From assembly GCF_003704095.1 (NCBI RefSeq), contig NW_020844494.1, positions 682,001-746,000 of the forward strand: a DNA stretch of 64,000 nt. The letters are read 5' to 3'. Origin of the DNA: Pocillopora damicornis. Its lineage: Eukaryota. Positions 1-62,012 of this stretch are shown here, piece by piece. Position 1 is the stretch's first letter. Each line of letters starts with the position of its first letter. The notes beneath the pieces were generated by a model, which was not told the origin of the DNA, did not search any database, and worked only from the letters and a program-made list of their open reading frames with translations. Both the position numbers and the translations under genes were made by a program.

Positions 1-1448
1 TGAGGAGAGTACAACATGAGAACTAAACTATGACTTTGTGTTAAGAAAACCGGAAGTCACAGACCGAGTTTAGTCTCGTCGTAAGTATTTAATTGACCAT
101 GATACTTCTTGGTTGGTCAATAAAAAGCTAACGGTTTCCGTTTGGCTACGTGAAATTTCAATAGTTGTTTTCATCTTTCTCTCAAAACAATGCAATCATT
201 AATAAATGAGGTGAGGGTGGGGAACAATTAAAATTTTTTGAATACAATACCATTGGGAAATTCTAGAAACTTCATTCGATTTTTTTAATTACGAAAAATA
301 ATTTACATATACACATCATTCCTTTTCAGAGGAACGCAGGAGATGTAAGGTAAACTGAATTTAAGCTTAGAAGTACAATCAAGTAAAAGTTCCCCAAGTG
401 CTTACATCTAGAACTAAAAATTTTTGTTTTCAGCATATGACCCTGGCATTAGCCCGATTCTAACAGTGTATTGGAACATTCCTCCAACTGAAAACGGTCT
501 CATGCGTTGGACTTAGGCTTTATTTTGAAATCTCAAGTCAGGGTTGTTTGAACGACTGCGATGCACTAACCTAGTTCATTGTATCTGTTGCCTTTTACGA
601 TACTTATGTAAGGGGTTTTGCATAAGGAAGATTAACAAGGCTAAAAGTTGATATCACACAAAATTGTGATTTTGTGCATTAAAGCATAACCATTAAACAA
701 CTTCAGAATTTAATTAATATATATATATATGCTTTTATGATCGTGACAACAACCCCCTGTCGCTAAGCACTGTTTGACCTCTTTTGATCTGTATCCTGGT
801 TACATGTTCAAGACGCGAAACTGAATAAAATCAAATACTTTATCTTGTTTCTAGAAGAAATTGTCTTCAAGAGCGCGCCAGTTTAGATTAAGGACGCTTT
901 AAATGGGAGGACGTTACCTGCAACGATACCTGTTGGCAATGACAAGAATACAGATAACGTTAACTATGAAAGGTATGTGGCCATTGTAGTTAGTTTCATC
1001 GTTGCAGGTTGCTACTATTGCAAAACACTCGAACTCAACCCAACGAGAAAAAGCGGCAGAATGTTAAGCTGTGAATGTTACAATATACACCCTAACTCAG
1101 TTGAAATGGGTCAAGTTTGAAAAAGAGCCTTGACGAACTTGGAAATGGCGCCATAAAAAATCGTGGCCGGTTTTATAAATTTAATCGCACAACATTAAAG
1201 ATCGATATATGTGCTCAGATGACCATCCAAAACAGCCATGTTGCCGCTAGCAGCCTCTGTGACTTCCTTCGTCTCGTAGCCGTGGTTACTGACTACAGGT
1301 GGAACTTTGCCTTAGTATTGTTGTTAGAAAATATATATTTATATTTAATTGTGGGAAATTGTACCAAATGCTGTAGGAAAGTGCTCAATACACGCGAGTG
1401 TAGAGCGAAATACAGTTCAAAATAACTAAAATGAAACGCGCATGATTC

Positions 1449-1490
1449 TCTGTTACTCTGAGTTTCGTACTTACGCACTCGTCAGACAGA
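1449..1490 (-). ncRNA. Type I hammerhead ribozyme (mirror copy)
   Basis: Minus strand reads UCUGU-CUGACGA-GUGC(GUAA)GUAC-GAAA-CUCAGAG-UA-ACAGA. The single change gives a tolerated G-U pair in stem II. Confidence 0.8.
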
Positions 1491-1495
1491 TTAAA

Positions 1496-1537
1496 TCTGT
1501 CTGACGAGTGCGTAAGCACGAAACTCAGAGTAACAGA
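1496..1537 (+). ncRNA. Type I hammerhead ribozyme
   Basis: UCUGU-CUGACGA-GUGC(GUAA)GCAC-GAAA-CUC(A)GAG-UA-ACAGA. Full core (CUGANGA, GAAA, GUA triplet), stem I UCUGU/ACAGA, stem II with GNRA loop, short stem III. Predicted cleavage after 1532. Confidence 0.85.
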
Positions 1538-4500
1538 GGATCATGCGTGTTTCATTTTAGTTATTTTGAACTATATTTGTATTTATGTATCCCTAGCAAC
1601 AAGGCAGATCATTCAAAAACTAAGGAGATTTTGATCACTCCTAATGGGATTTTCAACTCGTCTTCTGACAACGCATCAAACTTCAGTTTGTTTTCTTTAG
1701 ATGGCAGTAAATAACCGATATGGGCATCTTAAGATGGAAAGAAAAAGAAAAGAGCAGGATAAATCTACCCTCAGAGGTATGTTGCTGTACTTTCAGCCAA
1801 TTAATTTAAAGTTGATCACTTGCCATAAAATTTGAAAGTTTCATTTAATTACCGTTTAGGGTAAGTTTAGGGGTAATCATGCAGGCAGTTGTAATAAAGC
1901 TCTACAATGACAAGAAAACAGAAAATGCGTGTACAGTCGAGAATACTTTTAAAAACTACTTCTTCTGCCTTATCAAGGGAATAGTTTAGACATCACTCGT
2001 TTTTTTTTTGTGCCGTAAGTGTTGGTTGATTACTCACGAGACATGGTAAGCGCAAAAGCCACGTAGAGAGAGCCCTTAGTTATAAAATATAAAAACAATC
2101 AAAGGCAAAGTTCCTTACTCTTCCACATAGAAGTAAGGAATTATGTGAAATATTGATCATGTCTGATAAGCCACAAAATCAGTCCAAATTTTGGTGAGTT
2201 AAAGGAATTTGAGCGGGAGAAACCATTGCCCAGGGACATAGCAACTGAAAAAACATTGCATGTTAGTCTATTACTGATCATAAATGTCACTAAGGAAATC
2301 TAAAAACTTTTTAAATAGCGATTACGATAACGAAATATTTAAACCCAAGTAGGTCGGAAAAGAGCACGCTTTTTAAAATAAATATTGAAAATTTATATAT
2401 TTCCTTCTCTTTGTCTTGCAATTGAGTTCAAAAGACATTTCGTAATCAGGTACGACAGTTTTGAAACTCTTAAACAATATCTGTAACGTTGTGGGTGCCT
2501 TGTTCTTTATTGGACAATCCTCTTAGATTATTTTAGTGATGCACTGATATGATGTGGTGCAGGCAACTCTGGTTTGCAGTAATTTAATTTCATGAAAACT
2601 TTTCTTTGCCAAGTTGTAAACAGGAAAGATTATTTTTACAGAAAAAGCAGTGAAAGAACACTGACTACCTTTGGCATCGTCAAACTAAAAGACTCTATGA
2701 CGCAAAGGAAGCTTAACACTATAACAGTTTTATTCCCTTTTCTACCACTGCTTAAAAGCATCACACAGACTAAAATCTTTCCATCACGGAAGCAGGATGT
2801 AGGTTAGAAGAAGCTGGTGAAATGAATTTAGAAACTTTCCAACTGCTTGACAGTAGGGCATCTGAAATAACAAATACCATTTTATTCCAGTAATGCTTGT
2901 GACACCATCAGGAAACTTAATTTTAGATGTGCGGAGGAGAGGGTGGTTTACATTACGGGTTCCATATAACCTTAGCTTATTAAACAATCACTGAAAAAAA
3001 ACCAAACATACTTACGGTCTGAAGCTAGGCAATTTTATGTTTTTCCCACGCTTTAAGCATTTTGAGAGATTCCTCGAAGGATTTCAGTGGTGTTCACCGT
3101 TGGTACTTTATGGATTTTGTCACCTATAGTGGGTCAATTTTGCTTTTACTAGTTAAGAGTAATATTGTTTGTCATTACATTCAGTGAAGAAAAAACGCAA
3201 AAACTTTTTGCGCACTAAGAGGGTCAGTGTTTCCTTCAGGCTAGCGGTGATGTTTAAAAGGGCTATGACGTTGCTGATAGGGTTTTAATTTGATTTTTCC
3301 CTGAATATTTTCTCAAGATTTTGCAAATGGAAGATAGATTGCGGCATGGAAGCTAAACACACATTATTCATTAACCTTTTAAAAACTTCTTTGTTTAAAA
3401 TGACCGAAAAAGGAAAAAAGAGCTTACAGGATTCGAGCAGCCCTTAAAACACGCCGAGTTCGTGTGGGAAAGTCGCACTGTCAAGAGACTGACTCTACAA
3501 GAGACTGAATGATAAAGAGGCCGCGGTGGCTCAATATTAGGGAACATCTTTAAATACACGTCATCAGAGTGTGGCCAACCTATTAAAATATTAGATTTAC
3601 TTTGCTATTGGTTCGGAAATCAAAGATATTCATTTTTATCTGAAACGTGATAACAAACTGTCATGCTAAGATTGTTTTTTTTTTTTGTATACCCATCATA
3701 TATTAAATTCATTCTTCTTAATGACATTTTTATCGTAAAAATTTATAATGAAAAGTCTTCGCTACAATTTCTCTTGCCTCTCTTCCTATAATTAGTTGAC
3801 GTCATTCATTCGTGGAATTTAGTTCAAATTTAATTCAGTTATGTTGGTCTTTTTATCGATGTATGAATCGTTCTGATGTCTCTAACCTCGTTCAAGTCCT
3901 AATTATGCGCAAAAAATATGGCATATCAAAGCTTCGGAAATTGAAAACGTGGCCTTAGTTTATAACAATAATGAAAACTGTGACAAGAGAGAGTCGTTAT
4001 ACAAATTGAACGAGTACAAAGTTAATATTGCAGTCAATTGAATATCAATATGATCCATTCTGCTATTGGTTGTTTACTGGTGATATTTGTCTTCGTTACT
4101 CGCGTAGAGCGAATATAATTAGCGCCAAGAACACATAAAAAGAGTCTCTAGGCATGTGTGTAACTTCGGTCTTCTATTCAAATAGTTCATTGCCTAGGTG
4201 CTGCGTTTCTATAGTGGAAAAGCAAATACAGCAGATTTCTTCGCCGCGTGTTAGTAAATAATTCCTTACTGTTCCGGCAAAATAGAACAGTGTCGAAGAG
4301 GTAAGCGCATTAATTCTGGTACATTATCCTTGAGTTCATCAGTTGACATTATTTTTCATTCTTCTTTATGTCTGTCGGTAAAAATGTGTTCTGACAAACG
4401 CAGCTGCCGGGTATTTTAGAAAAATCTTTTGGTCCTCTGAGATTATCAATACAAGTTGATGAAAGTACAACTGAGATTCGATAAATAAACGGAACTTAGC

Positions 4501-61796: not shown

Positions 61797-62012
61797 TTTA
61801 GAGGGTAAGTTTCTAAAGAAACTGTGGTGCTACGTCGGTGAGAGAGTATATCAGGGTAATTTGGTATTATCAACTGAGTTGATCACGTTAATTAGCTCTG
61901 ACGTTTCGAGCGTTAGCCCTTCGTCAGAACGATCGATGAAGGGCTAACGCTCGAAACGTTAGCTTTTAAACTCTTTACGGTGGCCAATTTAAATTATCAA
62001 CCCAAATTACCC
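61797..62012. mobile_element. Penelope-like element terminal remnant: imperfect palindrome with minimal hammerhead motif
   Basis: Inner inverted repeat GACGTTTCGAGCGTTAGCCCTTCGTC / GATGAAGGGCTAACGCTCGAAACGTT; outer GGGTAATTTGG / CCAAATTACCC. Minus strand 61928-61896 reads CUGACGA-A-GGGC(UAAC)GCUC-GAAA-CGUC. Confidence 0.75.

What the first reader, a model, noticed from the sequence alone, without database searches (positions are those of the whole stretch)
1408..1578. Back-to-back twin hammerhead ribozymes in a near-perfect palindrome
Seen: a 171-bp inverted repeat whose two arms each encode a complete hammerhead core pointing outward (plus 1496-1537, minus 1490-1449). The only substitution inside the ribozyme keeps pairing (G-C to G-U). 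Known: Penelope-like retroelements and retrozymes carry type I hammerheads with short, often palindromic stem III that can act as dimers. Inference: RNA from either strand carries a ribozyme. Read-through RNA should instead form an 85-bp hairpin that masks it and could feed small-RNA pathways, while RNA starting near the centre would self-cleave. This could be a non-autonomous mobile unit or a bidirectional RNA-processing switch. No RT ORF is nearby.
Basis: partly seen in the sequence, partly recalled or inferred. Interest (0 to 1): 0.8.

Follow-up and report, generated by a model that had tools for sequence, protein, structure and literature searches.

The report
Inverted Penelope-element stubs carrying hammerhead ribozymes
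The palindrome with a hammerhead ribozyme motif on each strand is real, but it is the ordinary footprint of a Penelope-like retrotransposon that inserted as two short head-to-head copies of its own end, a layout already described for this class of mobile element.

Summary
There are 85-nt arms, 95% complementary. Each strand carries a complete type I hammerhead (HHR) motif, scoring 23.7 and 23.0 bits against Rfam Hammerhead_1, which is below the gathering score of 34.

It is not a stand-alone device. It is a roughly 225-bp insertion (window 1348-1572) flanked by a 13-bp target-site duplication. It consists of two head-to-head, 5'-truncated copies of the 3' end (pseudo-LTR) of a Penelope-like element (PLE).

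Longer copies of the same repeat continue upstream into an ORF. The modelled fold of that ORF is a GIY-YIG nuclease (I-TevI, Z 8.8). Related ORFs in this genome fold as telomerase-like reverse transcriptases.

Sixteen such twins were found in the genome. Those checked have their own target duplications. All sixteen have one long-tailed and one short-tailed arm. A second PLE family forms the same twins.

Inverted pseudo-LTRs, palindromic junctions, a tail on one arm, AT-rich targets and pseudo-LTR hammerheads are all published PLE hallmarks (PMC3846280, PMC8557442, PMC4209133, PMC11167929). This scan already noted such PLE palindromes elsewhere in this genome (s1-777731, s1-776141).

The finding is a new member of a known kind. 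A side lead: most arm 5' ends sit 27-29 nt downstream of a TATA box, and a few sit at the predicted ribozyme cut.

The parts
1335..1347 (.). Left copy of the 13-bp target-site duplication (AT-rich, degenerate TA-type microsatellite)
   Evidence: Read from the sequence. 12 of 13 bases are identical to 1573-1585. Other twins have their own 11-17-bp duplications.
1348..1413 (-). 'Tail': the extra 66 nt at the 3' end of the long-tailed arm, absent from the other arm
   Evidence: Aligns to the reference copy C3822 (L079) about 3333-3400. Contigs of other copies diverge at 1348. PLE tails on one of two inverted pLTRs are described in PMC3846280 and PMC11167929.
1348..1492 (-). Minus-strand, 5'-truncated PLE pseudo-LTR copy (long-tailed arm)
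   Evidence: 92% identical to C3822 3250-3410. The same sequence follows a GIY-YIG ORF in the long copies C1503, C140 and C3822.
1449..1490 (-). Hammerhead motif of the minus-strand arm; predicted cut after 1454
   Evidence: Rfam Hammerhead_1, 23.0 bits, full-length model match. Helix II holds one G-U pair.
1490..1496 (.). Head-to-head junction (partly self-complementary heptamer), where the 5' ends of both arms meet with 1-3 nt of overlap
   Evidence: Other twins have 5- or 6-nt junctions, filler bases or unequal truncations.
1496..1537 (+). Hammerhead motif of the plus-strand arm; predicted cut after 1532
   Evidence: Rfam Hammerhead_1, 23.7 bits, full-length model match. All core positions are present.
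1493..1572 (+). Plus-strand, 5'-truncated PLE pseudo-LTR copy (short-tailed arm)
   Evidence: 92% identical to C3822 3250-3338. Contigs of other copies diverge at 1490 and 1572-1573.
1573..1585 (.). Right copy of the target-site duplication
   Evidence: Read from the sequence. 12 of 13 bases are identical to 1335-1347.

Best explanation
Window 1348-1572 is one old, dead-on-arrival insertion of a Penelope-like retrotransposon (PLE). It consists of two inverted, 5'-truncated copies of the element's pseudo-LTR joined head to head. Each pseudo-LTR carries the element's own type I hammerhead, so the junction looks like outward-facing twin ribozymes. Shown: the arms are the 3' terminus of a repeat whose longer copies run upstream into a GIY-YIG endonuclease ORF. 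The genome is full of RT-plus-GIY-YIG ORFs followed by the same ribozyme type. Each twin has its own target-site duplication in AT-rich or (TA)n DNA. Every twin pairs a long-tailed with a short-tailed arm. Inferred (mechanism, following Frangieh et al. 2024): the element's endonuclease cuts both target strands about 11-17 bp apart, and each 3'-OH primes reverse transcription of element RNA from one of two internal start sites. The two start sites account for the long and the short 3' end. Both cDNAs run to the 5' end of a short pseudo-LTR transcript. Their ends, which are partly self-complementary, anneal and are filled in, which makes the palindrome. The common arm start lies 27-29 nt downstream of a TATA box at a CATT initiator-like site in three PLE families, so it is most likely the pseudo-LTR transcription start. 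The ribozyme would then sit at the very 5' end of the element's RNA. In this copy the ribozymes have no role of their own. The promoter is missing, and any read-through RNA would fold into a hairpin of about 80 bp.
For: (1) There are at least 87 BLAST matches to the region in the genome. The repeat reaches beyond the palindrome on one side only. (2) The long copies C1503, C140, C3822, C392 and C2995 continue upstream through about 190 nt of 3' UTR into an ORF with Cys-rich linker, IIY...YIG...R..H motifs. A model of that ORF (pLDDT 80.6) is closest to GIY-YIG nucleases: I-TevI Z 8.8 (rmsd 2.4 over 90 of 92 residues), T4 EndoII Z 7.4, UvrC Z 5.5. (3) More than 150 related EN matches occur in the genome. 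Related ORFs carry FDV..G / YRDDG RT motifs. A model of a 681-aa homologue hits reverse transcriptases, with several telomerases among the best (E 1e-7 to 1e-5). (4) 13 twins lie in fetched loci and 3 more appear. All 16 have one arm ending near reference 3330-3338 and the other ending between reference 3386 and 3410. (5) The twins checked have individual target duplications of 11-17 bp, several in (TA)n. (6) A second PLE family, with a different helix II, forms the same twins. It is the ribozyme of an RT+EN tandem at C2983. (7) TATATAA lies 27-29 nt upstream of the recurrent arm start in three families. (8) Published PLE hallmarks match: an inverted 5'-truncated copy, a tail at one end only, palindromes at head-to-head junctions, TATA plus Inr in the pLTR, TSDs (PMC3846280, PMC8557442); an HHR in the pLTR with short palindromic helix III (PMC4209133); two internal RT start sites that define the tail, and cleavage and extension of both strands (PMC11167929).
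Against: No full-length copy of this exact family, with RT core and both pseudo-LTRs, was recovered. The RT evidence comes from related families and from an inverted RT fragment next to the C3822 copy. Pfam, NCBIfam and PDB sequence searches gave nothing for these ORFs, so the PLE assignment rests on motifs, fold matches and element architecture. The transcription-start reading is sequence inference only. RNA reads were too few to show starts. [quoted passage not shown] The ribozyme scores fall below Rfam's gathering threshold, and cleavage was not tested.
Confidence: 0.85

Rival explanations
1. It is a non-autonomous, retrozyme-like mobile unit: the roughly 150-nt hammerhead-plus-tail unit or the whole palindrome is itself a master copy, repeatedly mobilised in trans by PLE proteins, possibly through self-cleaved or circular RNA.
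For: Many copies consist only of the pseudo-LTR part starting at one recurrent 5' end. Animal retrozymes are reported to derive from PLE pLTRs, and corals hold both (bioRxiv 10.64898/2026.07.22.740005).
Against: No tandem direct arrays were seen in about 45 loci. The arms lack the upstream TATA box, so they cannot easily be source genes. Junctions and truncation points differ between twins, so the palindrome is made at insertion rather than copied. Few arm ends lie at the ribozyme cut.
Confidence: 0.08
2. It is a MITE or foldback DNA transposon whose terminal inverted repeats happen to contain hammerhead-like sequence.
For: It is a near-perfect palindrome with a flanking direct repeat in AT-rich DNA.
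Against: The outer ends of the two arms are not equivalent: there is a 66-nt tail on one arm only, in 16 of 16 twins. The duplication length varies from 11 to 17 bp. Single arms and 5'-truncated arms are common. Long copies continue from the inner side of an arm into a PLE ORF.
Confidence: 0.02
3. It is an exapted host element: a hairpin locus feeding small-RNA pathways or a strand-specific RNA-processing switch kept by selection.
For: Read-through RNA would fold into a very stable hairpin. RNA contigs touch the flanks.
Against: The arms have diverged by about 5% with no sign of constraint. The same structure recurs at many unrelated loci as insertion debris. No promoter or conserved flank was found, and RNA coverage is near zero.
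Confidence: 0.04
4. It is an assembly artefact (a spurious fold-back join).
For: PLE inverted repeats are known to trouble short-read assemblies (PMC8557442).
Against: Contigs from an independent DNA run cover flank to element on both sides. One spans the centre (1455-1519) with no mismatch at the depth of the single-copy flanks.
Confidence: 0.01

Closest known systems
Inverted pseudo-LTR ('head-to-head') insertions of endonuclease-containing Penelope-like elements (Arkhipova et al. 2013, PMC3846280; Craig et al. 2021, PMC8557442)
   Same: An inverted 5'-truncated copy abuts the direct one. The junction is palindromic. An optional tail sits on only one of the two inverted pLTRs. A TSD flanks the whole insert. 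The pLTR holds a TATA plus Inr. Targets are AT-rich or (TA)n.
   Different: Here nothing lies between the two pLTRs (no ORF at all), so the insert is a bare 225-bp palindrome. The tail is about 66 nt rather than 30-40. The TSDs are longer (11-17 bp against 8-10 bp in the rotifer).
Type I hammerhead ribozymes of metazoan PLEs (Cervera and de la Pena 2014, PMC4209133)
   Same: The motif lies in the pLTR. Helix II has 4 bp. Helix III is very short with a near-palindromic loop, which suggests activity as a dimer. Families differ by compensatory changes. Cnidarians are among the reported hosts.
   Different: Helix I has 5 bp. This family has a canonical helix III rather than the 'min-HHR' form. A min-HHR-like twin does occur elsewhere in the window, at 61898-61962.
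PAc (Poseidon, Anolis) in vitro retrotransposition (Frangieh et al. 2024, PMC11167929)
   Same: Two internal RT start sites explain the short and long 3' ends. Both DNA strands are cleaved and extended, which explains the inverted arms. The AT-rich cut site matches.
   Different: In vitro there was no strand preference for either start site, whereas all 16 genomic twins here pair one long with one short end. In PAc the HHR overlaps the ORF start, whereas here it lies downstream of the ORF stop, in the pLTR.
Non-LTR retrozymes of animals (Cervera and de la Pena 2020; Li et al. 2026 preprint)
   Same: They are short non-coding units with a type I HHR, derived from PLE pLTRs.
   Different: Retrozymes are tandem direct repeats that give circular RNAs. 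These units are inverted pairs or single copies, and no arrays were found.
5' inversions of LINE-1 by twin priming (from general knowledge, not tested here)
   Same: Priming on both target strands in one insertion event yields an inverted segment flanked by a single TSD.
   Different: L1 twin priming inverts an internal segment and does not give a palindrome. Here both cDNAs start near the 3' end and reach the same 5' end.

Membership tests
Hammerhead ribozyme, type I (Rfam RF00163) | Conserved catalytic core (C3 U4 G5 A6 N7 G8 A9 ... G12 A13 A14, A15.1-U16.1, H17 not G) | tested here: met
   All positions are present on both strands. Across 29 distinct copies, position 17 is A, U or C and never G. 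The copies were picked with a core pattern, so invariance of the core itself is partly circular.
Hammerhead ribozyme, type I (Rfam RF00163) | Three helices around the core with open helix I, supported by covariation | tested here: met
   95.7% of pair cells are standard pairs, against 24-55% when partners are slid. There is one clear compensatory change (U-A to C-G in helix II) between two PLE families, so covariation is modest.
Hammerhead ribozyme, type I (Rfam RF00163) | Score at or above Rfam's gathering threshold (34 bits) | tested here: not met
   Scores are 23.7 and 23.0 bits, with full-length model matches and E about 1e-3 in a 291-nt search. Short PLE hammerheads commonly fall below this cut-off (stated from general knowledge).
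Hammerhead ribozyme, type I (Rfam RF00163) | Mg2+-dependent self-cleavage | not testable with these tools
   The only hints are indirect. In two twins (C4019, C3136) three arms begin within 1 nt of the predicted cut. A strict search found only C4019 with both arms ending there.
Penelope-like element (EN+) | C-terminal GIY-YIG endonuclease | tested here: met
   The ORF sits directly upstream of the ribozyme in the long copy C1503 (L046:6965-7456). It has IIY/YIG/R/H motifs. Its fold is closest to I-TevI (Z 8.8), T4 EndoII (7.4) and UvrC (5.5). Foldseek ranks I-TevI first but at E 0.6.
Penelope-like element (EN+) | Telomerase-related reverse transcriptase in the same ORF | tested here: inconclusive
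   For this genome's PLE superfamily the feature is met. ORFs joining YRDDG RT motifs to the EN occur at C2983 and C3597. The homologue alignment has an ADKT motif and RT motifs. The model hits TERT, DRT9 and group II RTs. For the exact family of the window, only an RT fragment next to the C3822 copy was seen. Pfam gave no RVT_1 hit.
Penelope-like element (EN+) | Pseudo-LTRs in tandem or inverted arrangement, with an optional tail at one end | tested here: met
   All 16 twins have one long and one short 3' end. A partial tandem with ribozymes 2.1 kb apart lies at C2983.
Penelope-like element (EN+) | Short target-site duplication; AT-rich or microsatellite targets | tested here: met
   The window has a 13-bp TSD (12 of 13 identical). 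Other twins have 11-17 bp, several in (TA)n.
Non-LTR retrozyme | Tandem direct repeats of an HHR-bearing unit | tested here: not met
   No direct arrays were found in the window or in about 45 loci of the family.
MITE / foldback DNA transposon | Equivalent terminal inverted repeats at the outer ends and a TSD of fixed length | tested here: not met
   The outer ends differ by a 66-nt tail in every twin, and TSD length varies.

The most novel reading that the evidence does not exclude
The many pLTR-only mini-insertions act as a fossil record of the 5' ends of PLE template RNAs. Most arms start at one site 27-29 nt downstream of a TATA box, directly 5' of the ribozyme, in three PLE families. That would place the hammerhead at the extreme 5' end of the element's transcript. 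A few arms start at the predicted cut, which would be the first in vivo trace that ribozyme-cleaved RNA is reverse transcribed. The strict pairing of one long with one short 3' end (16 of 16) would mean that the two strands of one insertion use different RT start sites, an asymmetry not seen in vitro.
Probability: 0.3. Interest if true: 0.5.

Novelty: new member of a known kind. Interest (0 to 1): 0.25.

Why it matters
As a claim of a new ribozyme device it does not hold: this is transposon debris of a described type. It has modest value for annotation. Such twin-hammerhead palindromes mark PLE insertions in coral genomes, where protein-family scans miss the ORFs. It also has modest value for PLE mechanism. 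The bare two-pLTR insertions expose both the 5' and the 3' ends of the reverse-transcribed RNA. They show a strict long/short asymmetry, a recurrent 5' end next to a TATA box, and rare ends at the ribozyme cut. These are testable constraints on how PLEs prime both strands and on when the hammerhead acts.

Tried and rejected
1. The Rfam gathering scan of the whole window found nothing. Only the permissive scan shows the hammerheads. The miRNA and sRNA hits there are generic hairpin matches.
2. Pfam and NCBIfam scans of six local ORFs, the 392-aa ORF and six homologues gave no RT or GIY-YIG family. PDB sequence searches with a single protein and with a profile gave nothing. Fold comparison was therefore needed.
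3. The ESM Atlas lookup pointed to clusters with HTH_animal, GIY-YIG and RVT_1 domains. It was used as a lead only.
4. The 2.6-kb 'insert' between arms on C140 is two longer head-to-head copies plus an assembly gap and unique DNA, not an internal coding region.
5. RNA evidence was sought with one raw-read run and two contig sets. Only a handful of reads were laid, with no starts or ends, and one contig reads through from the upstream TATA region of another copy. Neither expression nor cleavage can be judged.
6. Twins with both arms ending at the ribozyme cut were searched for. Only C4019 was found in family A and none in family B. With two independent loci this stays suggestive only.
Their arm ends are known only from BLAST coordinates.
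8. The bacterial promoter scan is irrelevant to a eukaryotic element and is ignored.
9. A snap-back (self-priming) origin of the palindrome was considered. It fits symmetric junctions. It fits less well the twins with unequal truncations, where either arm can be the shorter one, and those with filler bases. It is therefore ranked below priming on both strands, but it is not excluded.
Full report
OBSERVATION

The inverted repeat is present as described: arms 1408-1492 and 1494-1578, 85 nt each, 95% complementary, 1 nt apart.

A default Rfam scan of the window finds nothing at gathering scores. A permissive scan of 1350-1640 gives full-length matches to Hammerhead_1 on both strands:
- 1495-1538 on the + strand, 23.7 bits;
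- 1491-1448 on the - strand, 23.0 bits;
- gathering score 34; E about 1e-3.

Read from the sequence, the plus-strand motif has:
- helix I 1496-1500 with 1533-1537;
- CUGACGA at 1501-1507;
- a 4-bp helix II capped by GUAA;
- GAAA at 1520-1523;
- a 3-bp helix III (counting A15.1-U16.1) with a 3-nt loop;
- A1532 at position 17.

The minus-strand copy differs inside the motif by one G-C to G-U change.

Read-through RNA would fold into one hairpin of -148 kcal/mol.

The junction is not an assembly artefact. In an independent DNA run, contigs cross from each flank into the element. One contig spans the centre (1455-1519) without a mismatch at the depth of the flanks.

WHAT IT BELONGS TO

The window's genome has 234 Mb in 4393 contigs. 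Sequencing runs holding this stretch are labelled coral or marine metagenome, and the closest protein relatives are from anthozoans. From memory only, the assembly statistics resemble a Pocillopora assembly; this was not tested.

The genome holds at least 87 BLAST matches to the region. The repeat extends beyond the palindrome on the left side only.

Three forms of the repeat occur:
- full twins;
- single arms that stop at the palindrome centre;
- long copies in which the sequence continues upstream of the ribozyme.

In the long copies (C1503, C140, C3822, C392, C2995) about 190 nt of untranslated sequence separate the ribozyme from the stop codon of an ORF. That ORF ends in a Cys-rich linker followed by IIY...YIG...R..H motifs.

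Family scans failed on these proteins, and so did PDB sequence searches. I therefore modelled the 164-aa ORF of C1503 with an alignment of relatives (pLDDT 80.6). The four best structural matches among 48,161 chains are all GIY-YIG nucleases:
- I-TevI, Z 8.8, rmsd 2.4 over 90 of 92 residues;
- T4 EndoII, Z 7.4;
- UvrC N-terminal domain, Z 5.5;
- PD-T4-3, Z 5.3.

Foldseek also ranks I-TevI and EndoII first, but weakly.

More than 150 related endonuclease matches are scattered through the genome. ORFs at C2983 and C3597 join this endonuclease to FDV..G and YRDDG polymerase motifs. An alignment of 20 homologues shows an ADKT motif and the RT motifs. A model of a 681-aa homologue matches reverse transcriptases, with several telomerases among the best hits (E 1e-7 to 1e-5).

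A reverse transcriptase with a C-terminal GIY-YIG nuclease, followed by a hammerhead, defines an endonuclease-positive Penelope-like element (PLE). The Cys-rich linker suggests the Neptune, Nematis or Hydra type. The clade was not resolved.

No PLE protein fragment lies in the window itself.

ANATOMY OF THE INSERTION

I used the natural copy on C3822 (locus L079) as a ruler. Its landmarks are:
- a TATA box at 3219-3226;
- the common arm start at 3250-3253;
- helix I at 3256-3260;
- the predicted cut after 3292;
- a short 3' end near 3332;
- a long 3' end at 3400, followed by target (TA)n.

In the window the minus-strand arm runs from 1492 to 1348 and has the long end. The plus-strand arm runs from about 1493 to 1572 and has the short end. 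The 13 bases at 1335-1347 and 1573-1585 are a direct repeat (12 of 13 identical) of AT-rich target DNA. Contigs from other copies of the family diverge from the window at 1348, 1490 and 1572-1573, which supports these boundaries.

The outer 6 bp of the reported palindrome are a chance match between the tail and the target duplication.

THE TWIN LAYOUT IS MADE AT INSERTION

Thirteen twins of this family lie in the loci I fetched, and three more are visible from coordinates. In all 16, one arm ends at the short site and the other at the long site. Among single copies both end types occur.

The twins have their own target duplications. Examples are 11 bp at C4019, 12 bp at C3136 and C464b, 14 bp at C3290 and C1472, and (TA)n at four loci.

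Junctions also differ between twins. Some have 5 or 6 nt between the helix I strands, some have filler bases, and several have unequal 5' truncations in which either arm may be the shorter.

The two arms of a twin share private variants. The window's arms are each other's best match.

A second PLE family forms the same twins with the same long/short rule. Its helix II reads GCGC/GCGC with a UUAG loop, and it is the ribozyme of the RT+EN copies at C2983.

Genome-wide, a strict motif pattern matches 55 times and a strict twin pattern matches 7 places, with no match for either reversed control.

HOW IT MOST LIKELY AROSE

All of these features are published for PLEs:
- Arkhipova et al. 2013 (PMC3846280) describe inverted pLTRs, a tail on one of them, palindromes at head-to-head junctions, a TATA box plus initiator in the pLTR, and TSDs.
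- Craig et al. 2021 (PMC8557442) describe the inverted 5'-truncated copy, the one-sided tail, the HHR in the pLTR and a (TA)n bias.
- Cervera and de la Pena 2014 (PMC4209133) describe type I hammerheads with short palindromic helix III in PLE repeats, from cnidarians to arthropods.
- Frangieh et al. 2024 (PMC11167929) show in vitro that a PLE protein cuts and extends both target strands. They also show that reverse transcription starts at two internal RNA sites whose spacing is the tail.

Applied here (inference): one insertion event primed cDNA on both strands, one from the distal start site and one from the proximal start site. Both cDNAs ran to the 5' end of a short pLTR transcript. Their partly self-complementary ends annealed and were filled in.

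Three PLE families keep TATATAA 27-29 nt upstream of the recurrent arm start, which sits in a CATT initiator-like context. That start is therefore most likely the pLTR transcription start. This places the ribozyme at the extreme 5' end of the element's RNA.

The copy in the window begins downstream of the TATA box, so it lacks the promoter. Its arms have since diverged by about 5%.

THE RIBOZYME ITSELF

Across 29 distinct copies from two families:
- 95.7% of pair cells are standard pairs, against 24-55% when partners are slid;
- helix II shows a U-A to C-G compensatory change between families;
- position 17 is A, U or C and never G.

The copies were selected with a core pattern, so core invariance is partly circular.

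Between the two families, DNA similarity is confined to the 53 nt of the ribozyme and its first downstream bases. The flanks do not align.

Helix III is too short for a stable monomer, as in other PLE hammerheads that are thought to act as dimers. The two motifs of a twin lie on opposite strands, so they cannot dimerise in one RNA.

A SIDE LEAD

Arm 5' ends fall into these groups:
- about 25 arms at the putative start;
- about 8 at the 5' foot of helix II (3264-3270), unexplained;
- three arms in two twins (C4019 and C3136) within 1 nt of the predicted cut.

A strict search found no further twin of the C4019 type. With two independent loci this is suggestive, not significant. Frangieh et al. 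found no RNA-seq ends at the cut in Anolis.

RIVALS

- A retrozyme-like master unit is unlikely: no tandem arrays, no promoter, variable junctions.
- A MITE or foldback transposon is contradicted by the unequal outer ends, the variable TSD length and the link to the PLE ORF.
- An exapted hairpin or switch has no support beyond the fold energy.
- An assembly artefact is excluded.

VERDICT

It is wrong where it proposes a dedicated bidirectional device.

The finding is a new member of a known kind. The same scan had already noted PLE head-to-head palindromes with hammerheads elsewhere in this genome (s1-777731, s1-776141). Those notes agree with this reading but were not used as evidence.

LIMITS

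No full-length copy of this exact family was recovered. Expression, cleavage and small RNAs could not be tested. Further loci could not be fetched.

Noticed in passing
window 61898-61962: A second, smaller head-to-head pair (28-nt arms, 93% complementary, 9 nt apart). It is built from a different hammerhead-like motif: CUGACGA plus an extra A, a longer helix II, and GAAAC-GUC with no helix III loop, like the 'min-HHR' of PLEs. One arm is truncated inside the core. Relatives occur at C358 and C280. Rfam does not call it a hammerhead.
   Followed up: partly
L071 (C4019) 1528-1679; L076 (C3136) 1525-1679: Two twins of the same family whose arms begin within 1 nt of the predicted ribozyme cut instead of at the usual start. 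Both have clean 11- and 12-bp target duplications. They may be traces of reverse transcription of self-cleaved RNA.
   Followed up: partly
L008, L009, L011, L012, L026, L064 (reference positions 3264-3270 of L079): A third cluster of about 8 arm 5' ends lies at the 5' foot of helix II, inside or just after the CUGANGA box. No explanation was found; RT stalling or microhomology joining are possibilities.
   Followed up: no
L068, L070, L072, L073, L074, L077, L078; L049 2752-2797 and 4846-4891: A second PLE family with a compensatory helix II forms the same twin palindromes. It is the ribozyme of a partial tandem of RT+EN copies on C2983.
   Followed up: partly
L047 5564-6028: An ORF fragment with Helitron_like_N (E 9e-13) and a Rep domain lies next to a PLE copy on C2995, which suggests a nest of transposons.
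   Followed up: no
L058 1379-1424; L063 1350-1395: A further hammerhead family (helix I UCCC/GGGA, different helices II and III) has the same TATATAA-to-ribozyme spacing upstream.
   Followed up: no
window 1100-1266 and 1597-1834: Contigs of RNA libraries lie on both flanks of the insertion at low depth, so the insertion may sit in an intron or UTR of a transcribed region. No ORF of note lies within 6 kb.
   Followed up: no
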